Assembly: GCA_010909165.1 (NCBI GenBank)
Contig: MU008159.1
Location: 2,046,001 to 2,110,000 of the forward strand
Reading direction: 5' to 3'
DNA length: 64,000 nt
From: Anthoceros angustus
Lineage: Eukaryota > Plantae > Anthocerotophyta
Shown here: positions 5,871 to 36,063 of the stretch, piece after piece
Layout: every line of letters begins with the position of its first letter
Position numbering within the stretch: position 1 is the stretch's first letter
Position numbers and translations under genes: made by a program
The notes under the pieces: model-generated
Database searches by the model: none
Seen by the model: only the letters and a program-made list of their open reading frames with translations
What the model was told of the DNA's origin: nothing

Positions 5871-6827
5871 CTACTCGGTGGTATATGATAGCTCGAAGTG
5901 CCATAGAATCATGTCCTATATACATATGTACACTTATCCTTGAGAATCTTGTTTTAAGTTTGATGAGTTGGAGAATCCCACTCTTTGTCCTTGGATACAC
6001 ATGTGTCCAGAAACATGCATTTGTGAGAAAAAAAGTATCCAAGTTGGACGTGCCGGCTGCCATATTGAAAGTGTGTTCTCGATAACAGCAGCTTACATAC
6101 ATGTATACCGTGTTCCGGTGTACGAATTAGGTTAAGGTAGGACAAACAGTGAATAGGGTTATGTTTATGTATGTCCCAAGCCCAAGGTGATAATTTCGGA
6201 CTGGGGGCCTCACGGCGGTTTGAGCAGCCCAGGCGGGCGCCATGAAGGGCCATGTGCAGTCAACATTGGGGCGATTCGTGTGTACTGCATAATCAGGGAG
6301 GGGCAGGAGGCCAGCCAGGGCCTGCCAGACGGCCGGGCCTGAATACTGTATGTGTACAAGACGTCCAGGGAAGCGAAGAATTAATACGCAGAGTGAGAGT
6401 CTGTGGTGGAGCGGAGCAGAGCGGAGCGGGGGCCGGGGCCGGGGCCGGAGCGTCTTGTAACATTAGCAAGGGCCTCCCAAGGCTTGTACCCAATTACCCA
6501 CGTGAGAGCGCCGTAGCATGAGTAATGACCCACTGGCGTGATGCACCCAGCTCACAAATTCTCAGCCCAGGCATCGCCCACCTTCCCCATTGCCAGCTCT
6601 AGACTGTACGTGATGGTTTTTGTCAGGGGGCCACAGACCCTTATGTACCTCGTCGCCTCCCTCTCTTTGCCTCCCACCCTCACTCGCTTCCTCGCATTCG
6701 CTCGCCCTCACTGCCTCCTCTCCGCTCTTGCCGAGCTCGCGCCTTCTGCCGGAAATTGAGCACAGCTTCGCAACCACCAGCTTGGGACTGCGTTCTTGGC
6801 GGTGTGACTCAGGCCACAGCAACAGTC

Positions 6828-9661
6828 ATGGACACGGACTACGTGGAGTCTCTGGACGACATCTTCAGCGGCGTTTTGAGCGAGAATTGGGCGCTGCCGC
6901 CACCACTCGAGGGGCCCCATGATTTTACTGTCGCTGCTGACCATGGGCTGGAGGCTCAGCTGCCTGAGCGTGAGGGCGAGGTCGAGATGGGTGAGCCTCA
7001 GGGTGAGCCTCTGAGTCAGCCTCAGCCTCAGCCTGCGTCTGAGTGTATGGTTGACGACATCTGGACAGCGGCTATGGCCGCGGTCGATGCGGCTCTGAGT
7101 AAGATCCCGGCTGAGGCTATCGGTGCAGGTGCGGGTGCGGGTGCGGATGCAGGTCCGGGTGCGCATGCGGCGGCGCCCCTTGTCCCTCTCGTTGAGGATC
7201 CCGCTGGCCACGGGGTGAACTGGAGCACGATGTTAGGTTATGGCGAAGGAGACACCTTGAATCAGGAGCTTGGAGTGGGAGACTGGACCGTGCCGGAAAT
7301 CTGCTACCAACCTGGAGATCTGGATCACTTTGAATTGTCGTGGAAGCTGTGGAACATGTCCAGCCCACCGAGTTCCTCTGCCGAGCCCACCGAGTCTGCC
7401 ACAGTGACTGCTGCGCAACGTTCATCGGAGGACGCATCCCGTACGTGTGGTCTCCTTCACTTTCTCCATCGAGTTGGGTACGACGAGGATGGTCTGGAGG
7501 TGGAGGGCGGCCACCGTGCTGGAGCAGGACCGGCAGACGCAGCACCGGCGCCAGCAGAAGCAACACCAGCAGAATCAGCACCAGTAGTTCCCGCTCCGGT
7601 TCCGCCCCCGGACGGCCACGGGTCGCTGCTTCCATTGCCGCTGCGCTCGCGCAGCAGCGTCATCCATCAGCAGCAACAGCCGGGTACCAACATCCCCCGG
7701 AGTCTGTCGGCCCGCGAGCGTCGTCTGGCTGATGCGGAATTCGAGCGGGCTCTTTCCATGGGGCTCTTTGCACCACCTCGGCGCTGGACTGATGAGGAGC
7801 GCGTGATCCGGCCTCCAGAGCTGGTCGACACCCGGCGCTGCTTGGACCTGCAGCCTGGTGAGAGGGAGACGTTGAGGAGGAGCGCGGGGGACGGGATCAC
7901 CGGATCCGCAGCGGGCGCAGCCTCAACGACGCAGGGTCGTGGGAGGGAGGCATCGATTGCCGAGTCTCCAGAGTGTGACGTTCCGAATTTGGAGGAGGTG
8001 CTGACCCACCCCGAGCCCCATACCGCGTCAAGAGGTCCGACACTGAGGCCGCGCCCGAAAAGGCCTAGCCGCGCCGCCAGGCCACGAGCAGCCAAGGTCA
8101 AGGCTGCGCAAGAGGTGTCGAATCAGGCGATTAAAGGGACCGGTCCCGTTAAGCAGGTGAAGCTCAAGCTCAAGCTCAAGGTGAAGGAGGCCGTGGGGGA
8201 TACGGATGGAGATCAGGCAACCTTAACCCCGCGTTTGCAGATGGATCAAGAGAACAACATCGATGTGAAGGCTGACGAGGGTGTGCCGAATGCGGTACCG
8301 GTACCGGTACCTGTGGTGAAGACTCCATTTGGCCCTGCCAGGATTCTTCCAAGGCCTTACCCGAGGCCGGGACAGGCTCCAGCAGAGTCCCTGGAGGATC
8401 AACTGCGGCGGATGACAGCTCCATCTCGGCAACTGGGATGCTCCAAGAGGAAAACCAAGGAGCTCCAGGTTTGGAACCGCAACGTGGATGCCCAAAACCT
8501 CAGGGCAGATGCTGTGGAGAATTCGAATCCTGCAAAGAGAGCCAGGGCCAGCACGGTGGGATGTACGGTCACTGGCAGCCCCAACCAGGCTGCCACTGGC
8601 AGTGATAAGCAGGTCGAGAGTCAACGATCGGCACCGGTTTGCGTACAACTCCACCCTGGGTTACAGGCTCAGCTAGCTCGCCCTGCAAATGCGAATCCCC
8701 AGCCGGATCCACAGCAAAGAGAGCCTCAGGGTGGAAACTCACTCTGTCTGCCAGTCACATTCTTTGGGTGGAGTCCGGTGAACAGATCTGCAGGGGCAGG
8801 GTACAACATGCAGCCCCCGGCAGCTGCTGAAGGAGGAGCTTCTACGTTTCCCTCGGCGTATGGATCCGGAGTCGGGCCGGACCTGCATCATGCTGTGGGT
8901 TTCTTGAGTGGTAATGAATTTACCGTTGTTGAGTCCTCCCGTCCAGATTATGTCATTGCTTGCGACTCCGGCGCAGGATGGACTTACAATGCTGTTATGC
9001 CGCCTGGGCGGGCTTCCAGTGCTGCTGAGCCAATAATAAACAGCCATTCCCATGAAGAGTGCGTAGCAGGCTACAGTATTTCAGGGCCCCTGTTTCCCTT
9101 TGCCTTAATTGACCTGCAGCCAGCAGCGGGTTTGGATTTTCCTTTACCGGTGCTACCCAGTTCACCGGCCCAGGCCGAGACTCCGAACGCGCTTCTGCAG
9201 CATCCGCCGAGTCCACACGGCTTCACCGGGGGGAGTCTGACGGCAGAAGGTGAGATCTCCAGGGATGCATGAGGAAAGAGTTTGATTGAAAGCAAATTTT
9301 CAGTATCTTGGCAAACGTTGGGCATGCTGACTAATTCCTGTGTAGCTCTCGTAGAATCTGATCTGGACTCTACGGGACGTGGAGCAAATCTGAGCCTGGA
9401 TACTATCATGGAAGAGGCTAATTCTGCTGACCCCGCAGAGACAGAAGTGGCTGGACACAGCCCTGGCGCTGATGGTAAGGCATTATTTCCAAAACATTTG
9501 GGCTTCATCTTACAATGGGCTAGGCTGTGTACTTGTGGCTTGTGGCCTGTTGTTCAAACAAAGCTTACAATTGTGCGTGACTTTCAGGGACAAGCGCTTC
9601 AGCTGATGGCCGGAGGACATTTCGTTGCCCGACTATCTATTGGCCCCGATATGGGAAATAG
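6828..9661 (+). CDS. Orphan Pro/Ala/Ser-rich, probably disordered protein (~870 aa); exons 6828-9249, 9355-9474, 9588-9661
   Basis: 2.4-kb uninterrupted ORF with first ATG at 6828. GT-AG introns keep the frame (AEG|ESDL...GADG|TSAS...GK*) and the same splice sites are present in the paralog. No recognisable domain. Confidence 0.7.
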
Positions 9662-13803: not shown

Positions 13804-14218
13804 CTGATATCTTTATATAATATAAAGAGAACCCGAAATAGCAAGTTTGTGGCTCCATAATTTGGCTTGTTCCATGAAATCAAAACACCTTCAACCTTCC
13901 TTTGTTCCTTGCTTGGTCTGTATTCGTCTCTGATTTTCTCTAATGCTTCACGTGTGCACCTTCGGTTGACAGACATGTCCATCCCATATCGGCAAGTGCG
14001 TGCAAAACACGCCAACTTGGTTGAACCTCCACCACAGCCCAAACCTCCAAAACGCAAAAGGACAGAAGTCAATGTTGAGGCACGAGCTTCCGGGAAACGG
14101 AGGAGTGCAGCAGGAGGAGGTGCGGGTGGTGGTCATGACCAACCAACATCCAGACCCACAGCTGCCGTAAAGTATTAGGGAACGGACGCTGCGGAGGGGC
14201 GCCACGGCCGAGAACGGT

Positions 14219-14311
14219 CGAGGCCGTGAGGCCGAGACCGCTCGAGGCCGTGAGGCCGAGACCGCTCGAGGCCGTGAGGCCGAGACCGCTCGAGGCCGTG
14301 AGGCCGAGACC
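14219..14311. repeat. 24-bp minisatellite x4
   Basis: CGAGGCCGTGAGGCCGAGACCGCT x4, with partial copies at 14370-14410. Confidence 0.9.
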
Positions 14312-14862
14312 TTTCTAGGCCGTGCGCCCGACGCGCCCATTCCCTAAGCGTAAGGAGCGGCCGAGTCCGGGGCCGAGACCGCTCGAGGCCGAGACTGCTC
14401 GAGGCCGAGGTCCGTGAAGTCAGATAGACTAGGTGCCTCTACCACCGGCTTATATGTCTTTTCTCTCTCTCTCTTACGAATTTCCCTTCACATGCTTTTT
14501 CCAACTTTTACACAATAAAAGGATTATCTTCACCGCCGTAATTAGGCTCTAATCAAAATAGTTTTGTCCATCACACATATTCTATTGGAGTAGATGGAGT
14601 GTAAAATGGTTCCGATTGTGCCTTCTCTTCAGAATAGTACTTTTTTAGCTGCTGATTGTACGGTCCAGATAAATGTATAATCATTTCGAATATTTCATCC
14701 AAGCGAGAATATTTCTGCAATTTAAACCATTGTCAGAATTCATATATAAAACTTATCTATGTTTTTAACTTTAGTACTCACCTCAAAGAGTGAAAACAAC
14801 TCGTTTTGATTCTTCGATAACTACAAACAAAAAGTAAAAGTAATTAGTCATTTACCTCCATT

Positions 14863-16330
14863 TCAATTCGGAGAAGATCTTTCTTTGCATATACCTTTTC
14901 GACAAGCGTTAAACACGTGCTGTGAAGATTCCCCACACTGCGGAAATGTGATCGTATGTTCTGAAGAAACATAAACATTAGAATTTATCTTGGAATGCAA
15001 GCAGATATTACCTTTCAAACGATGTACCTTTTGAATATTTTTAGTTGTCTCCGGTTCTTCCATGAGAGACAACAAGTCTGTCGTTTTCAACTCCTTATTT
15101 TCAATTGCTGCCCCTATCTCTGCATTCAATGCATACATAATTACATTACATAGAATTATATGTAATGAAAATAATAGAGAAAGAGAAGTTATCGCGGCTT
15201 ACTTGCTTGGATCTGTCTGTACTGCTCGAATGTTGGGTTGGACCCATCTTCATTCAAGATGGGCTGTACTTGCTCTTTTAGACTATGCTCCCAAATTGCA
15301 GCATACTTAGTTTTAAAGTCTTGAAAAAGTGGTGGATATTGAAAATTGCTCATCCACTTTCCAAACTCGGTGAACTCAAGTGACGGCCCGTAAGTTGGTC
15401 CATCCTCCTTGAAGTCATCAATTTTTCTCTTTTTTGCCTGATCAAAAACCAAAATCATTACTTTCTTAAACCAAAATCATATTAATCCAAATTATATACA
15501 TTATACATTTTGTATACTTGATTGGAGATGGCTGCGTTGTCAATGTTGTTGTCAATCTCATCGACTTTGTCCTTTATATTTTTCGCAGCAGCAGCTTGTT
15601 TTCCAGCATTCTGTAATGCCAAGTTATAAGAAGCTAAATGTGAAGCAATGAAGGTATGAATGTAACTTTAGATTACCTCTAGTACTGCCTGAATTGAACT
15701 TTGATATCCCTCCAACATTGTTTGCATTGAAATCTGGTGTCCATTAAACCTTTCCACAAGTGTGTACGTTTCCAGCTCCAATTGAGCTGTTGTTCGAAGG
15801 TTTTTTTTAATATCCTGCAGAGATAAATTTAGGGTTTAGATTTTCGGATTTGAGCATACTTAGATCAAGTTTATGAAATTAAGAGCATTGCTTACCTTCT
15901 TTATCTTATTCAACTGGGCAGGCATCTCGCAAAGATGCTTAAGGTCTTGTTTGTCCATGACAGAGAACATTGTGTGCTCGCAGAGGACTGCAACCCACGG
16001 GTTTTGTTAGACTCTGACCAACGAGAACATACAGGACTAACAACAATCATTTTTCCTGAATACCTTTTTCTACGATCTTTCTTATCTCCAGCAGTGGTGG
16101 TTCAAACTCTGCGTTAGCGTCATATCCTGGATCCTCATGGGTGGGAAGTAATTTGTCAGAGTGGCGCTCACAGGGTGGCGTCCTGTAGTTGTCTGCAGGG
16201 GGTTGACACAATAAATATTAGTAAAAGTAAAAGCAATGTAAAAAACGTAAAATACGAATAACAATCAAGTGCCTTCTTGGATTTGAAAATCGTTATTGCT
16301 TTCTTTGTCAGATTCCATCCTGATTCAAAC
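14863..16330 (-). CDS. Unknown multi-exon protein with coiled-coil-like exons; 3' part of a gene extending to ~19.3 kb
   Basis: Exons 16192-~16066, 15987-15896, 15814-15677, 15610-15518, 15437-15203 and from ~15115 splice through GT-AG sites with matching phases. They give one continuous frame (..IVEKVLCEHTMFSVMDKQDLKHLCEMPAQLNKIKKDIKKNLRTTAQLELE..AKKRKIDDFKEDG..). Confidence 0.75.
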
Positions 16331-17089: not shown

Positions 17090-19285
17090 ACCTCGAGTAG
17101 AAAGCAACCCAGTGGAACCCCTACGGATGCACAGTCGACACCAAGGAAGAGAGTGATACCGCTCAGGGACAAACCAGGTGAGAAAAGAATGGTGAAACAT
17201 TGACAGAGCAAAACATGAACGAGAGCAACATAGCAAGTAACTCACCGGTCACTCTGCTGCGATGCAGCCTGTGGACAAACAAACAAACATGACAGACGGT
17301 GGCAATAAAGGCAAAAGCACCACAACCCACAAGAGGACATTTCACTTACTCCTCGGCGTGCAAAGGCCCCAAACTGCAATGGATCGAGCCCGATGGCGGC
17401 GGGAGGAGAGAAACGATGTGGGTCGTGAAGCTCAATAGCCACTGGACGTGCTGCCCAAGACGTGACACCATACAGGTACAACGTGAGTTCGAAGGGCGAA
17501 TCAAAACACCGCCAAGACGTGACACCAAGGAAGAGCACGAAGGCATCAAGGTTCTCTGTGCTTCAAGGTTCTCCAGCCAAGGGTTCAAGAGCTTGAACCC
17601 ACAGCCTCCCAAAAACTCTCGAAGTCGGAGCGCAGAAAGCAACCCAGTGGAACCCCTACAATGGATGCAGTCGACACGCCAAGGAAGAGAGTGATACCGC
17701 GGACAAACCGGAGAAAAGAATAGTGAAACATTGATGAGCAAAACATGAACGAGCAACATAGCAAGTAACTCACCGGTCACTCTGCGTGACAGTCCGTGGA
17801 CTGAAACAAACAAGCAGACGGTGGCAATAAAGGCAAAAGCACCACAACCCACAAGAGGACATTTCCAGCTTACTCCTCGGCGTGCAAAGGCCCCAAAACT
17901 GCAATGGATCGAGCCCGATGGCGGCGGGAGGAGAGAAACGATGTGGGTCAGTGAAGCTCAATAGCCACGAAGCTGGACGTGCTGCCCAAGACGTGACACC
18001 ATACACAGGCAGGTACAACGTGAGTTCTGAAGGACGAATCAAAAACCTGGAAGTGATGCCGCCTGAATCAACAGAAAGGAGCACGAAGGCGTCAAGGGTT
18101 CTCCAGGCTTCAAGGGTTCTCCAGCCAAGGGTTCAAGAGCTTGAACCCACAGCCTCCCAAAAACTCTCGAAGTCGGAGCGCAGCAGCGAGGGACCGCAAT
18201 GGATGCAGTCGACACGCCAAGGAAGAGAGTGATACCGCGGACAAACCGTGAGAAAAGAATAGTGAAACATTGTGAGCAAAACATGAACGAGCAACATAGC
18301 AGTAACTCACCGGTCACCAAAGCGCGGATGTGCCAGACAAACAAACATGCCAGACGGTGGCAACAAAGGCAAAAAGCACCACAACCCACAAGAGGACATT
18401 TCCAGCTTACTCCTCGGCGGTGCAAAAGCCCCAAAACTGTGGCAGTCGGATCGGAGCCCAGTAAGCGCTGGCGGGAGGGAGACAGAAACGATGTGGGTCA
18501 GTGAAGCTCAATAGCCACGAAGCTGGACGTGCTGCCCAAGACGTGACACCATACACAGGCAGGTACAACGTGAGTTCTGAAGGACGAATCAAAAACCTGG
18601 AAGTGATGCCGCCTGAATCAAAGGAGCACGAAGGCATCAAGGGTTCTCCAGGCTTCAAGGGTTCTCCAGGCGTCAAGGGTTCGAAGAGCTTGAACCCACA
18701 GTCTCCCAAAAAACTCTCGAGAAGTCGGAGCGCAACAGCAGACCGACATGCGGTCGACACGCCAAGGAAGAGAGTGATACCGCGGACAAACCAGTGAGAA
18801 AAGAATAGTGAAACATTGAGAGCAAAACATGAACGAGCAACATAGCAAGTAACTCACCGGTCACTCGAGCTGTGATGCGCGGACCAAACAAACAGCCGGC
18901 CAGACGGTGGCAACAAAGGCAAAAAGCACCACAACCCACAAGAGGACATTTCCAGCTTACTCCTCGGCGTGCAAAGGCCCCAAAACCGTGGGCAATGGAT
19001 CGGAGCCCGATGGCGGCGGGAGGGAGACAAAGCAGTGTTGAAGCTCAATAGCTAAGTCGGACGTGCTGCCCAAGACGTGACACCATACACGTGCGTACAA
19101 CGTGAGTTCTGAAGGACGAATCAAAAACCTGGAAGTGATGCCGCCTGAATCAACAGAAAGGAGCACGAAGGCGTCAAGGGTTCTCCAGGCTTCAAGGGTT
19201 CTCCAGGCGTCAAGGGTTCGAAGAGCTTGAACCCACAGTCTCCCAAAAAACTCTCGAGAAGTCGGAGCGCAACAGAGCAGAGGGA
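17090..19285. repeat. ~540-bp tandem array, ~4 copies, inside the minus-strand gene
   Basis: Marker CCAAGGAAGAGAGTGATACC at ~17141, ~17679, ~18217 and ~18762. Copies differ mainly by small indels and each carries a CCG|GTGAGT donor on the minus strand. Confidence 0.92.
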
Positions 19286-19289
19286 CCCC

Positions 19290-19540
19290 TTCACGAATGT
19301 CGCACACAGTGCGGCGCCATAGCAGAGCAGAGATTGGCGGTCGCGCGGGAGGCGTGCGGCGCCATAGCAGAGTAGAGATGGGCGGTCGCGCGGAAGGAAA
19401 GCGATAACAGATGAGCGGTCGCGGAGGAAAGGTAGAGATGGGCGGTCGCGGAGGCGCGGCGCCATAGCAGAGTAGAGATGGGCGGTCGCACGGAAGGAAA
19501 GCGCACAGAGATGAGCGGTCGCGCGGGAGGAAAGGGTAGA
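19290..19540. repeat. Degenerate GAGATG(G/A)GCGGTCGC repeats
   Basis: Motif GAGATGGGCGGTCGC / GATGAGCGGTCGC occurs about six times, interleaved with GCGGCGCCATAGCAGAG. Confidence 0.75.
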
Positions 19541-21949: not shown

Positions 21950-24715
21950 TGTATTGAAGTGTGCAACGTTTGGAGGGTTTGCCTCCAACATCTTTGGATG
22001 TTTGATTCTAATCTAGAAATATGTGTTGTTGTGTGGCATGGATGAGTGTGTTGTCCAATGAGCGATTGATTGTTTTACTTGTGTGGTCGATGTATATGTT
22101 GTACATCTATGGTTGTTTGTACGTCTAACTCTTGTTGTACTTGAAAAAGGGTTTTCACTTTATTTTTCCCAATATGTGGTGTATTTTTAGACGGGTTCTA
22201 TGTGTCATCCTTAAGAAAGTGGAAGGAATAACAACTCTAACAATGTCTAGCCCTGTTGTGTTTTGGGGCACCGCCCCATATCCTCTCTTGTCTAGACCGT
22301 CGATAATCAACTTTTAGACCTTCCAGGTTCTCATCCGACGGTTCAAGGCATGTGAGTTCTTTCTTTTCGCTTTGTTATCCGTTATGTTGTTTGTACATCT
22401 CAACGTTGTTCGATGACTTCTCCTGTTGCGATGGCTCTAAAAGAAAACCCACGGGCCTGGACCGGGCAAGAAGTGTGCACCTTTGTCTGAAGTCATGTCC
22501 AAGCCGTACACTCGACAACGTGTTAAAACAGCCATCGTTCACACTGCAACCCACCCTCTGCAGGATGATGGTAAAGTTGACGGTGTCCTTGTGCATAGTG
22601 AGGGGACATATTTGGTGCCGAAAAGTCCATTCCCAAACCGCCAAGGCACTTTTCATCCAAGGAGGATGCCCGGCGTGCTGCTGAATTTGCTCGGAAGAGA
22701 AGAAGGGTTGACACCCGACTGCCCTTGGTGGAGGGTCCCTTGTCGAGATTACTAACTATTGTCCTGCTTCGAGAGAGGGGTTAAGTTTGTTGGTGAGAAT
22801 GTCCATCGACACACGATTCCATGGTCCTTGCGAAGCATGCCTCTGATCTCGAAATGGTGGCTGCTCCTGCAGCAAGATAAGTCTCAATTCCTTTCACCGG
22901 TGAGTTTTCCATTCGGTCGCTCCCGAACTCAAGTTATCACGACCGAGTGTATTGATATGTTTGAGAGAATGAGGTCTGCTGATCCCGAGGATGATTTTGC
23001 TATGGGCATGGAAGAAATTGAAGATGAGGCCCATTTTAGGGACCAAGGGTTTGACCTCGATTCCCGAGGGAGCCGTGAATGATGCAATGAGTGGTGGTGA
23101 GGACAAGTCCAAACGCCAAAATAATTGGTGCAGTCGTCTTAAGTCTTTCATGAAAGTGAGTGGTGTGAGGGGTTGGGATAGTGCAATAGAGGACATTCCT
23201 CACAAGGACTTGAACCTTATATTGATACTGCTTTTCCACCAAGTTCGAACTTAAAAGACAACTCAAGATTCTCTCAAACGTAAGTCTTCATCCCTTTCTG
23301 TTATTCCGTTGTGTTTCTTTTCATTTTATGTGCGGTATTGAAGTGTGCAACGCTTCGGAGGGTTTGCCTCCCAACATCTTTGGATGTTTTGATTCTAATC
23401 TAGAAATATGTGTTGTTGTGTGGCATGGATGAGTGTGTTGTCCAATGAGCGCTTGATTGTTTTACTTGTGTGATGTATATGTTGTACATCTATGGTTGTT
23501 TGTACGTCTAACTCTTGTTGTACTTGAAAAAAGGGTTTTCACTTTATTTTTCCAATATGTGGTGTATTTTTAGACAGGTTCTATGTGTCATCCTTAACAG
23601 AAAGTGGAAGGGAATAACAACTCTAACAATGTCTAGCCCCAAGTTGTGTTTTGGGGCACTGCCCCCATATCCTCTCTTGTCTAGACTGTCTGATAATCAA
23701 CTTTTAGACCTTCCAGCAGGTTCTCATCTGGACGGTTCAAGGCTTATGTGAGTTCTTTCTTTTCGTTTGTTATCTGTTATGTTGTTTGTACATCTCAACG
23801 TTGTTCTGATGACTTCTCCTGTTGCGATGGCTCTAAAAGAAAACCCACGGGCCTGGACCGGGCAAGAAGTGTGCACCTTTGTCAAGTCATGTCCAAGCCG
23901 TACACTCGACAACGTGTTAAAACAGCCATCGCTCACACCGCAACCCACCCTCTGCAGGATGATGGTAAAGTTGAGTGTCCTTGTGCATAGTGAGGGACAT
24001 ATTTGGTGCCGAAAAGTCCATTCCCAAACCGCCAAGGCACTTTTCATCCAAGGAGGATGCCCGTCTTCTTTGCTCGGAAGAAGAAGGGTTGACACCCGAC
24101 TGCCCTTGGTGGAGGGTCCCTTGTCGAGATTACTAACTATTGTCCTGCTTCGAGAGAGGGGTTAAGTTTGTTGGTGAGAATGTCCATCCGATTACTCGAT
24201 TCCATGGTCCTTGCGCGAAGCATGCCTCTGATCTCGAAATGGTGGCTGCTCCTGCAGAAGATAAGTCTCAATTCCTTTCACCTGGTGAGTTTTCCATTCG
24301 GTCGCTCCCGAACTCAAGTTATCACGAGTGTATTGATATGTTTGAGAGAATGAGGTCTGCTGATCCCGAGGATGATTTTGCTATGGGCATGGAAGAAATT
24401 GAAGATGAGGCCCATTTTAGGGACCAAGGGTTTGACCCTCGATTCTGAGGGAGCCGTGAATGATGCAATGAGTGGTGGTGAGGACAAGTCCAAACGCCAA
24501 AATAATTGGTGCCGGAGTCGTCTTAAGTCTTTCATGAAAGTGAGTGGTGTGAGGGGTTGGGATAGTGCAATAGAGGACATTCCTCACAAGGACTTGAACC
24601 TTATATTGATACCGTTTTCCACCAAGTTCGAACTTAAAAGACAACTCAAGATTCTCTCCAAACGTAAGTCTTCATCCCTTTCTTATTCCGTTGTGTTTCT
24701 TTTCATTTTGTGCTG
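21950..24715. repeat. ~1.38-kb tandem duplication covering the 5' exons of the recombinase gene
   Basis: TTGAAGTGTGCAACG starts both copies (~21954, ~23338). Both encode ..MRSADPEDDFAMGMEEIEDEAHFRDQGFD..KSKRQNNWC..EDIPHKDLNLIL, with different indels in each copy. Confidence 0.92.
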
Positions 24716-26001
24716 ATTTCAGATATTGGTGCGTTGATGTCCTTCTTCGAGGGTTCAATCGCATTTTGATAAGGAAGTGTGTTCTGGAGCAAAGCCGTCT
24801 TGGGTCTGATGTGCCTGTGATCAATATGTTTCACGGCGTGTTCAATGGTTGTCAGGCTGCACTTGTTGCTTCCATGAAAATCAGTAAAGACCTTGGTATA
24901 GTATCGTGCCGAAAGGTGGTGAAACTGATATCTGATGATGATGAGAGACGAATTCTTGCCCACAGTGACCATCAATGTTCTTTTGGGCGAGGCGCCCAGA
25001 AAAGGTTTGTGTTCTGATTCCTAGCTTCTTGTGTGCATTTTGCAATACTGTCGTTGTTGCTTCTAACGATTCGGTTTACGAATAGGTGTGCATATTTTGC
25101 ATGAATCGTTTCAGAGTACGTGGCGGGGAGGAATTGCACAACCTGTTAATCAGGGACCTCTCATTCTCTTCGGATTCTGGAGGCGTTTTTGTACAGTACG
25201 TTTGTCCATGTTTTGATTGATGCTTTGTTGTGTTGTAATACTCTCCGTGTATGATACCTTGTTTGTGTTGTAATACCCTCCTTGTGTTGCCTCGCAGATA
25301 CGAGGAACGACATTCGAAGAATTACAAAGTTGATATGCGCAACTACGAGTGAGCACTTCCGCCAAAAGTGAAAACTATGAGGTGGATGTTATTCAAACAT
25401 TTAAAGTCATTGACCATTGTCCAAAGTGGACCGCAAATGACAAGAATATATCTATCCAAGGGTTTCTTTTCAATTCTCCCATCGATAATCCAAGATCGAA
25501 TGTAAGTATCTTTTGATAAGGGTTCTAGGTTTGTGTTCCATTGGACGTGCTAACTTTAATTTTCTCTGTGAGTAGGCTTGGTATGCAAAACTCCGGGTAT
25601 CCAAAGGAATGCTCTCAAAATATATGAAGACAATGGCGAAGCTGGTCTTGATGGGTATTACGAACAAGAGCCGTGTAACGATGATTACGCTGGCCGACCA
25701 TGGCTCGTGCCCTCGATCTTGGCGTAAGCCACCGCCACAAACCGATGCTGGATTTTCAAGGTAGGATCTATTTGTTGATGCCGTCAGAACTTGTTTATGC
25801 CTTCTATTGACATGATGTGTTCTCACAGACTGTGGACTTTGCAGGTATGACCGTTCGTGGCAAGCAAAACAGTAGCTGTGGTTCTAGTTCGTGAAAGAAG
25901 ATCATACAATGAGTTGCTCAATGAAGAACTCGATCGGATGCGGATGACTTGCGGGTGTGCTTGTTGTCAATGTGACTCGGATATAGTTTTTCCACCAAGA
26001 T
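24441..26001 (+). CDS. Crypton/DUF3504-type tyrosine recombinase core, intron-containing, with several 1-3 bp indels as assembled
   Basis: Exons ..-24663, 24723-25004, 25086-25195, 25298-25501, 25576-25760 and 25845-26001. Motifs in order: KSKRQNNWCRSRLKSF, DLNLILI, AYF(C)MNRFRVRGGEELHNL (Arg 25119), YEERHSKNY (Lys 25317), DHCPKW..FLFNSPIDNPRSN|AWYAKLRVSKGMLSKYMKTMA, ITNKS-R (25657-25674), HK(T)DAGFSR|YDR (His 25736, Tyr 25846). Confidence 0.8.
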
Positions 26002-26084
26002 GTAAGTATTTTCTACCATGAAGGGAGTGATTTTACCGAGAAGATTATGATTCTACTGTAAAGGATGCTGATGTTAAGAATTTG

Positions 26085-28930
26085 TTGTGCATAGGCTTGT
26101 GCTCAATGTTGCCTACAAGTTCAGTAACGTAAGCATTCCATGAGTCGTTTTGGTTCAAGGTTTGTTTCTTTTAATCTTTTGATTGGTATTTGATTCTTTT
26201 TGTTGCTTTTTGTTGCGGTGTTGCCAATCACCACCCTCGCTATCCACCATGAAAGCAGGCCCCTTTTGTCAAGACTGGACCGGTTAGTATCTTGCTGTTG
26301 TATTTTCGTCCTCCTTGCTGGTTTGCACCCAATATTTCATGCAATGTTTGTTGTTGTTTGCAGTTCCAGCATTGTGAAGCTTTGGAAGCTGTCCAAGTGC
26401 CAGGAAGTAGTGTTAAAGATCTTCAGATTGACAACAGCAGACCAACTCCTGGGTGTATTCAACATCGACATGTTGAAAAGGTTAAGTGTAAAGGTGGTTT
26501 AAGTTTTATCCTTCATTCTCTTATTGTGTTTGTCGATTCTATGTTTGTCGGCAGAGTATTAGCCCCACCACTAAAGATCTGTCGCCCACTAGTTTGACGA
26601 GCATTTGGTCCTCATTCAACATTGATGGTGCCTAGTGTGGTGGAGGTGATGCCTCGCTTGGAGGCCTGTAAGCATTTTATGAGTCGTTTTGGTTCAAGGT
26701 TTGTTTCTTTTCTTCTTTTGCTGATTGGTATTTGACTTTTTGTTGCTTTTTGTTGCTTTTGTTGCGTGTTAATCTACCACCCTTGCTATCCACCATGAAA
26801 GGGGCCCCTTTTGTCGACTGGACCGGTTAGTATCTTGTTGTATTTTCGTCCTCCTTGCTGGTTTGCACCCAATATTTCATGCAATGTTTGTTGTTGTTTG
26901 CCCAGATTGTGAAGCTTTGGAAGTCAAGTGCCGAAGTAGTGTTAAAGATCTTGATTGACAACAGCAGACCAACTCTGGGTGTATTCAACATCGACATGTT
27001 GAAAAGGTTAAGTGTAAAGGTGGTTTAAGTTTTATCCTTCATTCTCTTATTGTGTTTGTCTCGATTCTATGTTTGTCGGCAGTATTAGCCCCACCACTAA
27101 AGATCTGTCGCCCACTAGTTTGACGAGCATTTGGTCCTCGTTCAACATTGATGGTGCCCGAGTGTGGTGGAGGTGATGCCTCCTCGATTGGAGGCTGTGT
27201 AAGCATTTTATGAGTCGTTTTGGTGTCGAAGGTTTGTTTCTTTTCTTCTTTTGCTGATTGGTATTTGACTTTTTTGTTGCTTTTTGTTGCGTGTTACCAC
27301 CCTTGCTATCCACCATGAAAGGGCCCCTTTTGTCAAGACTGGACCGGTTAGTATCTTGTTGTATTTTGGTTCTCCTTGCTGGTTTGCACCCAATATTTCA
27401 TACAATGTTTGTTGTTGTTTGCAGTTCCAGCATTGTGAAGCTTTGGAAGCTGTCCAAGTGCCAGAAAGTAGTGTTAAAGATCTTCAGATTGACAACAGCA
27501 GACCAACTACTGGGTGTATTCAACATCGACATGTTGAAAAGGTTAAGTGTAAAGGTGGTTTAAGTTTCATCCTTCATTCTCTTATTGTGTGTGTCTGATT
27601 CTATGTTTGCTGGCAGAGTATTAGCCCCACCACTAAAGATGCTGTGTCAGCCACTAGTTTGACGAGCATTTCAGTTCCTCAGTTCAACATTGATGGTGCC
27701 CAGTGTGGTGGAGGTGATGCCTCGCTTGGAGGCTGTAAGCATTTTATGAGTCGTTTTGGTGTCGAAGGTTTGTTTCTTTTCTTCTTTTGCTGATTGGTAT
27801 TTGACTTTTTGTTGCTTTTTGTTGTTGTGCATAGGCTTGTGCTCAATGTTGCCTACAAGTTCAGAACGTAAGCATTCCATGAGTCGTTTTGGTTCAAGGT
27901 TTGTTTCTTTTAATCTTTGCCGATTGGTATTTGATTCTTTTTGTTGCTTTTTGTTGCGTGTTGCCAATGTTACCACCCTTGCTATCCACCATGAAAGCGG
28001 GCCCTTTTGTCAAGACTGGACGGTTAGTATCTTGTATTTTCGTCCTCCTTTTGGTTTGCACCCAATATTTCATGCAATGTTTGTTGTTGTTTGCCCAGAT
28101 TGTGAAGCTTTGGAAGCCCAAGTGCGAAGTAGTGTTAAAGATCTTCAGATTGACAACAGCAGACCAACTCGGGTGTATTCAACATCGACATGTTGAAAAG
28201 GTTAAGTGTAAAGGTGGTTTAAGTTTTATCCTTCATTCTCTTATTGTGTTTGTCTGATTCTATGTTTGCTGGCAGAGTATTAGCCCCACCACTAAAGATG
28301 CTGTGTCAGCCACTAGTTTGACGAGCATTTCAGGTCCTCAGTTCAACATTGATGGTGCCCTGAGTGTGGTGGAGGTGATGCCTCGCTTGGAGGCTGTAAG
28401 CATTTTATGAGTCGTTTTGGTTTCTGAAGGTTTGTTTCTTTTCTTCTTTTGCTGATTGGTATTTGACTTTTTTTTGTTGCTTTTTGTTGCCAGGCGTTGC
28501 CAACTGTTACCACCCTTGCTATCCACCATGAAAGCAGGGCCCCTTTTGTCAGCACTGGACCGGTTAGTATCTTGCTGTTGTATTTTGGTTCTCCTTGCTG
28601 GTTTGCACCCAATATTTCATACAATGTTTGTTGTTGTTTGCAGTTCCAGCATTGTGAAGCTTTGGAAGCTGTCCAAGTGCGAAGTAGTGTTAAAGATCTT
28701 GATTGACAACAGCAGACCAACTATCGGGTGTATTCAACATCGACATGTTGAAAAGGTTAAGTGTAAAGGTGGTTTAAGTTTCATCCTTCATTCTCTTATT
28801 GTGTGTCGATTCTATGTTTCTTTGGCAGTATTAGCCCCACCACTAGCCACCACTAGTTTGTGAGCATTTGGTCCTCATTCAACATTGATGGTGCCCGAGT
28901 GTGGTGGAGGTGATGCCTCGCTTGGAGGCC
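26085..28930. repeat. ~530-660-bp tandem array x5, each unit carrying three small + strand exons
   Basis: Marker GAAAAG|GTTAAGTGTAAAGGTGG at ~26481, ~27007, ~27542, ~28201 and ~28758. Exons include FQHCEALEAVQVPESSVKDLQIDNSRPTPGCIQHRHVEK and SISPTTKDAVSATSLTSISVPQFNIDGAQCGGGDASLGG. Confidence 0.92.
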
Positions 28931-30789
28931 TGTGCCAAGTCATTGTGGTGAGACTTGAGCTGGAAGTGCAACAGGAAGGATTGTGGAGACACCGCCTATA
29001 GCTTTGGATATGGTAGAGCAAAGATGGGGTTGAGAAGGGTGGTTCAAGCGGGTTTGAGCGGCGTCTTCGAGATTACCCGAGAAAGGGAGAATGACAGGAG
29101 AATCGAAAAGGGAATTTCAACGGCAAATGATTTAGAATCATTGATTGAGCAGAGGCGCAAGGTCGTACAACCGAGTTTCCAAGCAAGAGAGAAAGCTTTG
29201 GAGATCCAAAGGAGAAAAATGTCGAAAGGAGGCAAGAGTATTTCAAGCAGGAAAAACTCAAACAGCAGAAGGAGCAACAGAAATGCGAAGATTGCGTGGG
29301 AAAGGCGTGAAGCAAACTATTGACAATGTTACAGTCCTCCAGCGCCCACTTCCATCCATGGAAAACCATATAAAGTCGTAAGTTGATTTAATTGTTCCTT
29401 GATTTTGATCGCTAATTTTACTTTAGTAGACTAAGACGGTAATGTTTGATTAGGTTCTCAACTTTCGTGAAGATGAAGAATTTCTCCAAAGCCCTGTGTT
29501 CATCAACCGGCAAACTATGATAATGTTGGACAAGTTGCCCGGTTAAACCAAGTGGTCTTGGAAACTATGTCTTCAATCTCTACAATTGTACAAATCAATT
29601 TTCCAAAATAAGGTGGGAATCTTTTCTAATGAACTTTTTCTTTGGCCTATTCCGAATCCTAATTGGTTACAAGCCTAATTTTACTTTGTATATGTAGATT
29701 TGTAATTTCGAATAAGGAGGATCAACTATTCGGTATTTTCTATTTTCTGTTATTTTGAATTCATGCACCGGATATACGAAACTTTGCAAAGATGATATTT
29801 CTTTGTTGGTTTTTGTATATCCCGGATCCGCATGAATGGTACTAATGTAAGATGTTTTACGCCGATTAGCGATTGTGTTGGAATTACTAGGCCTCCTCAG
29901 ATTACAATCTACCATGGTATTTCAGCTTCACTTGCTATTCACTTGGTGATCATTCTTTACCTCTTGTTCTAGTTTTGATTTGGATGGTAAAATGTTTCCA
30001 TTCATCACCACGCTTTTTACTCTATATTCACTTGGTTGATCCATTCTTTACCCTCCTATTCTAGTTTTGACTTGGATGGTAAAATGTTTCCATCCATCGC
30101 CTATGCTTTCTACTCTATTGTTACAATTTCTACCTTATTCAGTAAAAAATTTTTACCAATCGAAAAATTCTCTCTCTTCGTTTTACCCTTTTGGCCCTGA
30201 AAAAAAACCAACTGGGCGCGTCGAGGCCCCAGACGAGGCCGCGACTTTACGTCGACTCTGCTTCCACAAGGAGCATCAGATGGGAAGAGTGGGCCTTCCC
30301 AAGGGCCATCACAGCGGCAGCCTAGGCAAAGCAAGGGAGCATCAGGGCTGCTTGATGACAGCGCATCAACATTGTTCGATGATATCGGGATTGTGCCAAG
30401 GACCACTTTGGAGAATCCTTTCACTACGGCTGAGAAGAATGTCTTGACTGAAATTTGTACTGATCTATCAGAACAGGGGCTACTGGATAAGGAATGGTGC
30501 ATCCATGAAGAAGGAACTGACTCCACCCAATGTAATTTTGATCCCATTCCGCGCTTTGGGTGAACGGTATATGGATGCGCTGAGGACGGTAAGATTGTAG
30601 TTGGGTACATTCTATGGGCTTGGAAGTATGAAGTCCGCAATTCGTAATGAAGCTTCTAATATGCACAATGAAGGAGAAGTTCTTTGTGAAGAATTTAATT
30701 GTCATCACCGGTCTTGAGTGCGGACAAGTCGATTCCAAGGCGATGCAATACTCAAGACCGCGGGGATCGGACGCAATGACAAGTGATCG

Positions 30790-32065
30790 TGATTATGCGC
30801 GCACGCGCGCACAAGTGCGCGCACGAGGGCCCATTGAGACTCGGCGCGCCCGCGCGCACGAGGCCCATTGAGACCCGGCGCGCGCGCACTGGGCGCATGG
30901 TGCTATCAACCCCAAAGGCGTGCACTTGGGCGCCGCACGAGGGCCCATTGAGACCCGGCGCGCCCGCGCGACCGGGGCCATGTGATTCTGCGCGCGCACA
31001 AGTGCGCGCACGAGGGCCCATTGAGACCTCGGCGCGCCCGCGCGCGCACTGTGGCCCATTGAGACCCGGCGCGCGCACGAGGGCCCATTGAGACCTCGGC
31101 GCGCGCAATGGGGCACCATGAGACCCGGCGCGCACTGTGGCCCATTGCGCGCACAAGTGCGCGCACGCGCGCACAAGTGCGCGCACTGTGGCCCATTGAG
31201 ACCCGGCGCGCACATCGGGTAGTAACCGGTGCGCGCACAAGTGCGCACGAGGCCCATTGAGACCTCGGCGCGCCCAAGTGCGCGCACCGGCATGAGGTGC
31301 CCCATTGCGCGCACTGGGCGCCGCCTTAAGCCCAACCGAGGATGTCTCGTTAATGTATATGGTTGATGTATCCGTTAATGGAGTAATGGTTGTCTTTTAT
31401 TGCGGACATTCGGGACTATGCGCGCACTTGGGCGCACGAGGGCCCATTGAGACCTCGGCGCGCCCGCGCGCGCACTGTGGCCCATTGAGACCCGGCGCGC
31501 CCGCGCGCGCACAAGTGCGCGCACAAGTGTGCGCACGAGGGCCCATTGAGACCCGGCGCGCCCGCGCGCGCGACCGGGGCCATGTGATTCTGCGCGCGCA
31601 CAAGTGCGCGCACGAGGGCCCATTGAGACCCCGATGCGCGCCCAAGTGCGCACGAGGCCCATTGAGACCCGCGCACTTGGGCGCGCGCACGAGGGCCCAT
31701 TGAGACCTCGGCGCGCGCACTTGTGCGCGCAATGGGCACCATGAGACCCGGCGCGCACTCCGTCCATGGTGCCCCATTGCGCGCACAAGTGCGCACGCGC
31801 GCGCCCGCGCGCGACAAGCGCGCGCACTGTGCGAGATTGTGCGCACATCGGGCTGCAAAACCGGTGCGCGCACAAGTGCGCACACCTCGGCTCGCCTGGA
31901 GTCCCAGTGCGCGCACCGGGGCATGAGGTGCCCCAGCGCGTGCTTGTGCACGCCTTGGCGTCGTCTTAAGCCCAACTGAGGATGTCTCTGGTTAATGTAT
32001 CTGGTTGATGTATCTGGTTAATGGAGTAATGGTTGTCTTTTTATTGCAGACATTCGGGACTATGC
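30790..32065. repeat. GC-rich subterminal-type repeat array, itself duplicated (~640-bp period)
   Basis: More than ten copies of GGCCCATTGAGACC(C/T)CGGCGCGC with many CACAAGTGCGCGCAC palindromic motifs. A ~100-bp block (CTTAAGCCCAAC..GGACATTCGGGACTATGC) is repeated at ~31325 and ~31965. Confidence 0.9.
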
Positions 32066-34290: not shown

Positions 34291-36063
34291 GGGTATGGTG
34301 TTCACCCAACTGCTGAAGATATGAGGAAGTGCAGTGCATTGTCCAATAGTGCGGCAGCCGAGATTGGAGCAATGCTCGCTTATTCGACATAGCGCCGTGA
34401 AGAAACTTTTGAATGTGTCCAACGATGGCCATGTTGTTTCTCCTTACCAAAAGCCAATAGGGTTGATGGTCCCGCTATACGACCTATTCACGTAAAGAGG
34501 GAATGGGTTATAGATGGATGCTCGGAAGCGGAGTGGAATACTTATGCATTATCGAAGGGAGGAATCAGATGTTGACCAAGAACAAAGGAGCACAATATTC
34601 ATCGAACAGCGTATTACAGGCCATGAAGTGTTTCCTACAGACGAGGAAGAGTTGACCACCAAACCACACAAACGTGGACATCCGGTTTTTTTTGCCAAAG
34701 AGATGGCAGCAGGGAGATCAGTTAAGCCCAGGGCCGCAACGCTACACTTGGTTCAAGGAACATGCGCACCCATCGACCTTCAAGACTTGAGTCAATCACA
34801 GGGGCCCCAGAAGAAGAAGGAGAAAGATGGCAAAAAAGGTCCGGAAAACCCTAAGAACCCAGACGGAAAGAAGTGCGAAGACCAGAAGAAAGCGACCCTA
34901 CTTGGGACAACCAACATCTGGAGACGTTTGGCTTTGGCGAATCCCAAGGTGGAGAAACGCCATATCTTCCTCTTGCTATTTACGATCCGCAACGGCTGCA
35001 GGAGAACGATGACATCGTCGTCCCGAGGACGGAAAGACAACATTCGCCAAACTAGCTAGAAACATACACCGTTGTCATGTGTTGGAGACTGTTTAAATGT
35101 GAGTGCGCGCACAAGTTTGTGCACAAATACCGTACTCAAGGAAAAGTCGATCGTGAATGTCTCGGATGGTTTTCCTCGTAATTCCGATGTACAATGTGAC
35201 ATATCGTGTATCGCAACAATAATTGAAATGTTTGCGGGTGACATGTCGGAGAAATACCAAAAGGTCGATTCCAAAGGCGGATTTCGACGGTGCGTAAAGG
35301 GGTCGGAAACGTCTGGTGCTGTGGGGTTGGAGAAACCCCTTCGTAATGTGACGCTGTTGAAGGTTGGGTTCCTCCTGGTTGGACACACTCACGACCAAAT
35401 CGACCAGATGTTCTCCTGCTTTTCCAAAAGCTTGAAGCATAAGGAGGCACACACTCTTCCCGCGTTGTCGGACATTCTGGTTCATGCATACACGCCTACA
35501 CCGGAGATCAAAGTTTTGAAGGAGGTCCCGGACTTCAGGTCATATGTATGGCCGATTAGACAAGGCGATGGTCGCCCGGCATATTCATCGGCGGTAAGAA
35601 AATTGAACAACTTATCATTCCAGCACAGCTTAAAATCACCAGAGAAGAGAAAACCACTGTAGTGACAAGAATTAGGAGCAAGCAATATTCGACATCGATG
35701 TACTGGGAAACCGAAGCCGGGTTGGAGTTTTTGAAATTTGTCCCCTCCAACGATATAACAGTTGCACGGCTGACGGCCCTACGGGCTCAAGACAAGAAAG
35801 GGACGTCGGCAGGGTTATCTCCGACGGAAGGAGTGGCACATTTGAAAGCGGGTCTTTCGGAGCTGCGGCCATATGTGACTGGGAAAGATTATGGATGGTG
35901 GGAAGCATTCTGGGTGGACCAAGAAGAAATCGCAGTTATCGTGGAGAACAATATTGGGCTCGCACTAGAAGAGCCGTGGAAATGGTTCTCTCGGGCAGAA
36001 TCGGAAGAAACAGCACAACCACTCCAAGTTCCCGATGAAGCTATCCTTCTTGAGATAAAATGA
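34290..36063 (+). mobile_element. Decayed Sola-like (DUF7869-type) DDD transposase
   Basis: LKVGFLLVGHTHDQIDQMFSCFSKSLKHKEAHTLPAL (35350-35460) is followed by KQYSTSMYW and YGWWEAFW C-terminal motifs. The N-terminal and central parts are fragmented. Confidence 0.75.

What the first reader, a model, noticed from the sequence alone, without database searches (positions are those of the whole stretch)
24441..26001. Intron-split Crypton/DUF3504-type tyrosine recombinase in a land-plant genome
Seen in sequence: six GT-AG exons that, once joined, give the ordered motifs RGGEE, SKN, WY..V..GML..YMK.MA, TNKS-R, HK.DAGF and SR|YD. The putative catalytic Tyr codon (25846) lies just across an 84-bp intron, and the unspliced frame reads TAG there, so the ORF track misses the gene. 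Established: this R-K-(H)xxR-H-Y order is the tyrosine-recombinase catalytic set, and Cryptons are intron-containing YR transposons described mainly from fungi, oomycetes and animals (domesticated as ZMYM/KCTD1/QRICH1). Inference: this is a plant Crypton-like lineage that I do not know to be described. A few 1-3 bp indels, several in homopolymers (ATTTTGC ~25095, CACAAACC ~25739), must be corrected to open the frame.
Basis: partly seen in the sequence, partly recalled or inferred. Interest (0 to 1): 0.9.

Follow-up and report, generated by a model that had tools for sequence, protein, structure and literature searches.

The report
Dead Crypton-like recombinase gene copy
A broken, intron-split gene copy sits inside a multi-copy repeat of a plant-like genome; it weakly resembles the tyrosine recombinases of Crypton jumping genes, cannot make an enzyme, and its family assignment rests on modest statistics.

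Summary
The sequence facts hold. Six exons lie on the + strand, separated by five short (59-98 nt), T-rich GT-AG introns. The listed motifs are at the stated places. The Tyr codon at 25846 follows an 84-nt intron whose unspliced reading starts with TAG.

The gene is more damaged than "a few indels": at least eight frame or stop disruptions. It lies in a multi-copy repeat: 263 contig pieces, 90-100% alike, in a small DNA run. No RNA run was listed as holding it.

The Crypton/DUF3504 reading is only weakly supported.
- Pfam, PHROGs, PDB sequences and three large protein searches gave nothing for the pieces or for X-joined readings.
- A profile of 18 real CryptonA/DUF3504 proteins gave weak, colinear similarity: exon 1 to the N-terminal domain, the RGGEE/SKN region, and the WY..MK region. 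P is about 0.001 to 0.03 depending on the test.
- The catalytic tail (TNKS-R, H, Y) is no better than shuffled sequence.
- Intact animal members left out of the profile score 148-258 bits. This reading scores 3-5.

Verdict: most likely (about 0.6) a dead copy of a very divergent Crypton-like recombinase gene, not a demonstrated DUF3504 member. Earlier notes of this scan report many similar fossils elsewhere in this genome.

The parts
24383..24663 (+). Exon 1. A possible ATG lies at 24383/24389. The reading changes frame at the TGA at 24446-24448. Encodes the ..EDKSKRQNNW..IEDIPHKDLNLIL.. stretch.
   Evidence: Best-scoring of 2712 six-frame pieces against the CryptonA/DUF3504 profile (positions 11-77, 5.4 bits, E 1.2). 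In the exon-wise DNA tests 0-1 of 400 shuffles and 2 of 400 genomic decoys reach it.
24664..24722 (+). Intron 1 (59 nt, GTAAGT..TTTCAG, 53% T).
   Evidence: The exon 1 and exon 2 phases do not match, so one further frameshift lies between about 24725 and 24767.
24723..25004 (+). Exon 2, an open frame of about 94 codons (..LISDDDERRIL..).
   Evidence: No stop in one frame against 8 and 7 in the others. No significant match to the profile. hhalign aligns only its end.
25005..25085 (+). Intron 2 (81 nt, GT..AG, 44% T).
25086..25199 (+). Exon 3 with box I (RGGEE at 25119-25133). A frameshift lies near 25087-25100.
   Evidence: Aligns to profile positions 148-173 (FcrRGREnL..ds.G), rank 71 of 2712.
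25200..25297 (+). Intron 3 (98 nt, GT..AG, 46% T).
25298..25501 (+). Exon 4. EERHSKNYK (SKN at 25314-25322) is in one frame and ends at TGA 25347-25349. The rest (..DHCPKW.. at 25412-25429) is in another frame.
   Evidence: Using the SKN frame raises the profile score by about 5 bits. Exons 3+4 alone give P 0.06-0.11.
25502..25575 (+). Intron 4 (74 nt, GTAAGT..AG, 43% T).
   Evidence: One contig of the DNA run lacks 66 nt of it.
25576..25760 (+). Exon 5: WYAKL..GMLSKYMKTMA (25579-25638), TNKS-R (25660-25674), SHRHK (25727-25741), DAGFS (25744-25758). Frameshifts lie near 25705 and 25741.
   Evidence: The WY..MK part aligns to profile positions 243-263, rank 60 of 2712. Exons 5+6 give P 0.005-0.015. 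The tail from TNKS-R onward is no better than shuffles.
25761..25844 (+). Intron 5 (84 nt, GT..AG, 38% T). The unspliced frame reads TAG at 25762-25764.
25845..26001 (+). Exon 6. The putative catalytic Tyr is at 25846-25848 (SR|YDRS). TAG at 25873-25875 is followed by a frame change into a Cys-rich stretch that ends at a GTAAGT donor at 26002.
   Evidence: The gene seems to run on into the roughly 530-bp repeat array.
22001..24650 (+). Tandem duplication (period about 1381-1396 bp): 22001-23260 matches 23388-24650. It doubles the upstream region, exon 1 and the start of intron 1.
   Evidence: The duplicate of exon 1 (22973-23251) is the third-best piece of the window against the profile.
26100..28920 (+). 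Array of about 526-662-bp repeat units directly downstream. Each unit holds exon-like stretches between T-rich GT..AG segments.
   Evidence: Not analysed further.

Best explanation
This is a dead copy (pseudogene) of an intron-containing gene that once encoded a tyrosine recombinase distantly like those of Crypton transposons. It has an N-terminal DNA-binding-type domain followed by a catalytic domain with the R..K..(H)xxR..H..Y order.

The copy lies in a multi-copy repeat of a plant-like genome. It carries at least eight frame or stop disruptions and a duplicated 5' end, so it cannot make the enzyme.

Shown here:
- the split-gene structure;
- the damage;
- the multi-copy status;
- a weak but colinear similarity to CryptonA/DUF3504 proteins.

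Inferred by analogy with Cryptons (Goodwin et al. 2003, as cited in PMC3212892; Kojima and Jurka 2011, PMC3212892): an intact relative would excise its element as a circle and re-insert it by recombination between short direct repeats. This copy would have spread either while the gene still worked, or later with a recombinase supplied in trans, or by plain duplication.
For: Gene structure: five GT-AG introns of 59-98 nt are 44% T, against 27% T in the exons and 26% in the window overall. Each exon has a nearly open frame.

Multi-copy status: 263 contig pieces of a 98-Mb DNA run lie on 23300-26300 at 90-100% likeness, with word depth about 40-290.

Similarity to a profile of 18 proteins found with the published CryptonA-1_SP sequence (7 of 11 scanned carry DUF3504 and 6 of 11 Phage_integrase):
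- Exon 1 is the top piece of 2712 in the window and matches the N-terminal domain. Exons 3 and 5 match positions 148-173 and 243-263 in the right order.
- X-joined core against shuffles and decoys: 1-6 per 1000 reach it.
- hhalign P = 0.0023.
- Exon-wise tests against genomic decoys combine to P = 0.003.
- The landmark spacing (R to K 33 against 34 residues, W to TN 27 against 29, R to H about 19-21 against 23, H to Y 10 against 9) fits the CryptonA consensus (my own counting).
Against: - No Pfam, PHROGs or PDB-sequence hit for any piece or X-joined reading.
- No relative in 1.8 billion representative proteins with exon 5 as query, nor in the word-indexed search with exon 2 or the 174-aa core.
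- The catalytic tail is not above chance.
- A frameshift- and intron-tolerant scan of the whole window does not single out the locus.
- Intact CryptonA members score 148-258 bits where this reading scores 3-5.
- The reading frames were chosen with the motifs in mind.
- No fold test was possible.
Confidence: 0.6

Rival explanations
1. The gene is real but is not a recombinase. It is a dead, intron-containing gene of some other, unrecognised family carried by a repeat, and the YR motif set is a reader's pattern match helped by free choice of frames.
For: All standard profile and homology searches are blank. The very motifs that define a tyrosine recombinase (TNKS-R, H, Y) score no better than shuffles. 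The unbiased whole-window scan does not pick out the locus. With a frame choice that ignores the SKN motif, P is only 0.025.
Against: Three separate exons match three successive parts of the CryptonA profile in order. Exon 1 is the best piece of the whole window. Combined P is 0.003 against genomic decoys. The spacing of all landmarks fits. Unverified notes of this scan report many similar fossils in the same genome.
Confidence: 0.3
2. The gene is intact in the organism, and the frameshifts are assembly (homopolymer) errors, so this is a working plant Crypton recombinase.
For: One or two shifts lie next to short runs (TTTT near 25095, AAA/CC near 25739). Other copies in the DNA run differ by small indels at several places.
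Against: - There are at least eight disruptions, including three in-frame stops (24446, 25347, 25873) that are not indels. Most are outside homopolymers.
- No alternative letter is listed at the 25347 or 25873 stops in the DNA run.
- The 5' end is tandemly duplicated.
- No RNA run was listed as holding the stretch.
Confidence: 0.03
3. It is a host gene derived from a Crypton (like animal ZMYM/QRICH1/KCTD1 DUF3504 genes) that later decayed, not part of a mobile element.
For: The His of HxxR reads Lys, as in domesticated DUF3504 genes that lost catalytic residues (PMC3212892). The gene has introns.
Against: The stretch is multi-copy with many sequence variants and sits among tandem repeats and other transposon remains, which fits a repeat and not a single host gene.
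Confidence: 0.05

Closest known systems
CryptonA transposons and the DUF3504 (PF12012) recombinase-derived domain (Kojima and Jurka 2011, PMC3212892)
   Same: Same order and spacing of landmarks (RG.E box, S/TKN lysine, CP, WY..G..L..MK, TN.S.R, GH-like His, Tyr). An N-terminal domain with the ..SK..N....F...L motif. Multi-copy.
   Different: No PF12012 hit. 3-5 bits against a CryptonA profile where animal members score 148-258. Five spliceosomal introns. Plant-like host. His of HxxR reads Lys. Dead copy. Element ends unknown.
Glomhoppers, DUF3504-encoding CryptonA elements of Glomeromycota (PMC13465315)
   Same: Intron-containing and intron-less copies of a CryptonA-type gene. Mostly truncated or fragmented copies. 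Hosts that live in symbiosis with land plants.
   Different: Glomhoppers fall inside animal CryptonA diversity and carry a clear DUF3504 domain. This sequence does not.
Cre / lambda Int / XerD tyrosine recombinases (Phage_integrase, PF00589)
   Same: The proposed catalytic order R..K..HxxR..H/W..Y.
   Different: No sequence match in Pfam, PHROGs or PDB sequences. The fold was not tested.
DIRS/Ngaro tyrosine-recombinase retrotransposons
   Same: Eukaryotic mobile elements with a tyrosine recombinase.
   Different: No reverse transcriptase or RNase H was seen near the gene, and DIRS recombinase genes are not split by several introns. I did not test this beyond Pfam on nearby open frames.

Membership tests
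DUF3504 / CryptonA | Significant match to Pfam PF12012 (or to a CryptonA profile at a level comparable with other members) | tested here: not met
   No Pfam hit at E up to 10 for the pieces, the 72-aa reading or the 174-aa reading. The local CryptonA profile gives 3-5 bits against 148-258 bits for left-out animal members.
DUF3504 / CryptonA | Colinear similarity over the N-terminal domain and the box I to WY..MK region | tested here: inconclusive
   Present and in the right order, but weak. P ranges from 0.001 to 0.03 depending on the test; the combined value against genomic decoys is 0.003.
Tyrosine recombinase superfamily | Catalytic residues R, K, H-x-x-R, H/W and Y in order | tested here: inconclusive
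   Residues can be read at 25119 (R), 25317 (K), 25660-25674 (TNKS-R, with Lys in place of His), 25727-25741 (H) and 25846 (Y). This needs frame changes, and the tail scores no better than shuffles.
Tyrosine recombinase superfamily | Cre/Int-type catalytic fold | not testable with these tools
The domain is split over four exons with frame breaks, so no contiguous piece covers it.
Crypton transposon | Defined element ends with short (4-6 bp) direct repeats and no TIRs or LTRs | not tested
   No terminal repeats were found around the gene. The ends cannot be set from one copy, and other copies were not retrievable.
Crypton transposon | Dispersed multi-copy family | tested here: inconclusive
   Multi-copy with many variants in a DNA run. 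Dispersed as opposed to tandem or segmental copies cannot be told from contigs.

The most novel reading that the evidence does not exclude
The locus is one decayed member of an undescribed, intron-bearing, multi-copy lineage of Crypton-like tyrosine-recombinase transposons in non-seed land plants. The lineage would be so far from animal and fungal CryptonA that Pfam does not see it. It might have reached plants by horizontal transfer, for instance from animals or from mycorrhizal Glomeromycota, which carry CryptonA 'Glomhoppers'.
Probability: 0.45. Interest if true: 0.6.

Novelty: new member of a known kind. Interest (0 to 1): 0.3.

Why it matters
Cryptons are described from fungi, oomycetes, diatoms and animals. 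The full-text searches I ran found no paper that links Cryptons with ferns, mosses, liverworts, hornworts or lycophytes. A land-plant lineage would widen the known host range of tyrosine-recombinase DNA transposons and raise the question of how it got there.

This copy adds little to that case. It is dead, its assignment is statistically weak, and earlier notes of this scan already report better-preserved examples in the same genome. Its use is as one more data point and as a marker of a multi-copy repeat family.

Tried and rejected
- Pfam on six separate pieces, on a 72-aa X-joined C-terminal reading and on a 174-aa X-joined core: no family.
- PHROGs on the core: nothing.
- PDB sequences with exon 5, exon 3 and the core: only chance hits (IRF9, MotB).
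- Exhaustive phmmer of exon 5 against 1.8 billion representatives: two hits, both repeat proteins.
- Word-indexed search with exon 2 and with the core: nothing at E <= 0.01. In hindsight a laxer cut-off would have shown the 18 candidates.
- ESM Atlas with exons 5 and 2: noise.
- Metagenome and viral contig scans with exon 5: chance matches; L001 is a GC-rich bacterial contig.
- Viral scan with the CryptonA alignment: nothing.
- Exact look-up of six ATG open frames: not in the collection.
- tblastn of the pieces on the window: no second copy apart from the duplicated exon 1.
- My own intron- and frameshift-tolerant profile scan of the whole window: with loose penalties everything scores high; with strict ones the locus (18.5) is within noise (19-27).
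- I first preferred a reading of exon 4 that needs no frameshift.
- Pfam on nearby open frames, including the minus-strand gene at 14.6-15.8 kb and the 838-aa frame at 6756-9269: nothing.
Full report
WHAT IS THERE

On the + strand between about 24383 and 26001 the sequence alternates between two kinds of segment.
- Six segments have balanced base composition, and each is almost open in one frame.
- Five short segments of 59, 81, 98, 74 and 84 nt each begin with GT and end with AG. They are 44% T overall, against 27% in the exons and 26% in the whole window. Only 6% of 80-nt windows reach 42% T.

This is the signature of a spliced gene with short U-rich introns, and it does not depend on what the protein is.

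- RGGEE at 25119-25133
- SKN at 25314-25322
- WYAKL..GMLSKYMKTMA at 25579-25638
- TNKS-R at 25660-25674
- SHRHK at 25727-25741
- DAGFS at 25744-25758
- Tyr at 25846-25848, right after the 84-nt intron 25761-25844, whose unspliced reading starts with TAG at 25762

STATE OF THE GENE

I count eight disruptions:
1. TGA at 24446 with a change of frame.
2. A phase mismatch between exon 1 and exon 2.
3. A shift near 25087-25100.
4. A shift at the start of exon 4, needed to read EERHSKNYK.
5. TGA at 25347 with a change of frame.
6. A shift near 25705.
7. A shift near 25741.
8. TAG at 25873 with a change of frame.

Few of these lie in homopolymers. The 5' part (upstream region, exon 1, start of intron 1) is tandemly duplicated with a period of about 1.38 kb. 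After exon 6 a GTAAGT donor leads into an array of roughly 530-bp units that again look like exons and T-rich introns.

COPY NUMBER AND EXPRESSION

I laid a small DNA run of the coded organism A (98 Mb of Logan contigs) on 23300-26300.
- 263 short contigs were laid: 95 at 99% likeness or more, 94 at 95-99%, and 74 at 90-95%.
- Word depth was about 40-290 along the gene.
- The stretch therefore belongs to a multi-copy family with many variants.
- No alternative letter is listed at the stops 25347 or 25873. Only 12 of 80 indel differences were shown, so the frameshifts could not be checked one by one. The run may also come from the sample the window was assembled from.

The RNA run of the same sample had nothing on the stretch, and no RNA run was listed as holding it.

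STANDARD HOMOLOGY TESTS: ALL BLANK

- Pfam on six pieces, on a 72-aa X-joined reading of exon 5 plus the Tyr and on a 174-aa X-joined core.
- PHROGs on the core.
- PDB sequences.
- Exhaustive phmmer of exon 5 against 1.8 billion representatives. The two hits are repeat proteins.
- Word-indexed searches with exon 2 and with the core.
- ESM Atlas.
- Metagenome and viral contigs.
- Exact look-ups.

TARGETED TEST

The hypothesis names one family, so I tested that family alone.

Building the profile:
- I took the CryptonA-1_SP recombinase domain from Additional file 4 of Kojima and Jurka 2011 and used it to fetch 18 real relatives.
- Of the 11 scanned, 7 carry DUF3504 and 6 carry Phage_integrase by Pfam.
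- I built a local profile from the 18 proteins.

Results:
- Against all 2712 stop-free six-frame pieces of the window, the best piece is exon 1 (24354-24713). It matches the N-terminal domain (positions 11-77, 5.4 bits, E 1.2). Its tandem duplicate ranks third. Exon 3 matches positions 148-173 (the RG.E box) and exon 5 matches 243-263 (WY..G..L..MK), at ranks 71 and 60, in the right order.
- The X-joined core scores 3-5 bits (P 0.0005-0.003 with one target). Only 1-6 per 1000 shuffles or decoys made of other pieces of the window reach it.
- hhalign gives P = 0.0023 and probability 13% over 138 colinear columns.
My frame choice that ignores SKN gives 21.2 (75 of 3000). Reversed controls give 12.8.
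- A frameshift-tolerant alignment of the spliced DNA gives P about 0.01-0.05 against random genomic segments.
- Exon-by-exon tests, each against the part of the profile it should match, with frames optimised equally for real and null DNA:

| Exon(s) | Shuffled DNA | Genomic decoys |
|---|---|---|
| Exon 1 | 0-1 of 400 | 2 of 400 |
| Exon 2 | not significant | not significant |
| Exons 3+4 | 23 of 400 | 45 of 400 |
| Exons 5+6 | 2-3 of 400 | 5 of 400 |

  The Fisher combination against genomic decoys is P = 0.003.
- The distances between landmarks (R to K, CP to WY, WY to TN, R to H, H to Y) agree with the CryptonA consensus within a few residues (and my own counting).

LIMITS OF THAT SUPPORT

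- The catalytic tail from TNKS-R to the Tyr, the part that would make this a recombinase, is no better than shuffled sequence.
- A scan of the whole window that allows introns and frameshifts does not single out the locus.
- Intact animal CryptonA/DUF3504 proteins left out of the profile score 148-258 bits, fifty times more than this reading.
- Roughly eight indels in 1.2 kb point to only modest neutral decay. The weak similarity must therefore be mostly old divergence. If this is a Crypton relative, it belongs to a lineage far from CryptonA and is not a DUF3504 member in the Pfam sense.
- A fold comparison, the proper test at that distance, could not be run.

VERDICT

- Most likely (about 0.6): a dead copy of an intron-containing gene for a very divergent Crypton-like tyrosine recombinase, carried by a multi-copy repeat.
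- Main rival (about 0.3): a dead gene of some other, unrecognised family whose motif set is coincidental.
- An intact gene hidden by assembly errors is unlikely (about 0.03), because three in-frame stops are substitutions and not indels.
- A decayed host gene derived from a Crypton is also unlikely (about 0.05).

RELATION TO EARLIER WORK

Earlier notes of this scan report a dozen or more Crypton/DUF3504-like fossils elsewhere in this genome. Follow-up agents assigned some of them to an unnamed fern, moss and liverwort protein family. I could not retrieve those sequences, so I did not test whether this locus belongs with them. They raise the prior but are not evidence here.

Repbase lists CryptonA, F, I, S and V (PMC4455052). 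CryptonA was recently extended to Glomeromycota (PMC13465315). My full-text searches found no paper linking Cryptons to non-seed land plants.

CONTEXT

The window also holds a GT14 'Branch' glycosyltransferase gene at 49532-50302 on the minus strand and a DUF7869 open frame at 35072-35659. These fit a eukaryotic, plant-like genome rich in transposon remains.

Noticed in passing
window 22001-24650: A 1.38-kb tandem duplication doubles the upstream region, exon 1 and the start of intron 1 of the gene. The two copies are 92-100% alike.
   Followed up: partly
window 26100-28920: Array of five or six units of about 526-662 bp directly after exon 6. Each unit has exon-like stretches (for example ..FQHCEALEAVQVPGSSVKDLQIDNSRP..) between T-rich GT..AG segments, so the 3' end of the gene may be a repeated exon block.
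   Followed up: no
window 17100-19310: A second tandem array with a period of about 537-550 bp upstream of the gene. No direct or inverted repeat pairing it with the downstream array was listed.
   Followed up: no
window 30770-31960 and 14182-14331: Very GC-rich satellites: units built on GGCCCATTGAGACC..GCGCGCAC (periods about 59-99 bp) and a 24-bp repeat (GGCCGAGACCGCTCGAGGCCGTGA, 5 copies).
   Followed up: no
window 14574-15835, minus strand: Several protein-like open pieces (53-111 aa, for example ..FDQAKKRKIDDFKEDGPTYGPSLEFTEFGKW..) that look like exons of an unknown gene. No Pfam family matched.
   Followed up: partly
window 25507-25574: One contig of the DNA run skips 66 nt inside intron 4, leaving only 8 nt of it. 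This is a copy variant with a large intron deletion, not a clean intron loss.
   Followed up: no
window 49532-50302, minus strand: Open frame with a Core-2/I-branching enzyme (GT14, PF02485) domain, E 2.4e-30. It looks like an ordinary host gene.
   Followed up: no
   Followed up: no
window 6756-9272: An 838-aa open frame in a GC-rich stretch with no Pfam family. It may be a chance frame in GC-rich DNA.
   Followed up: no
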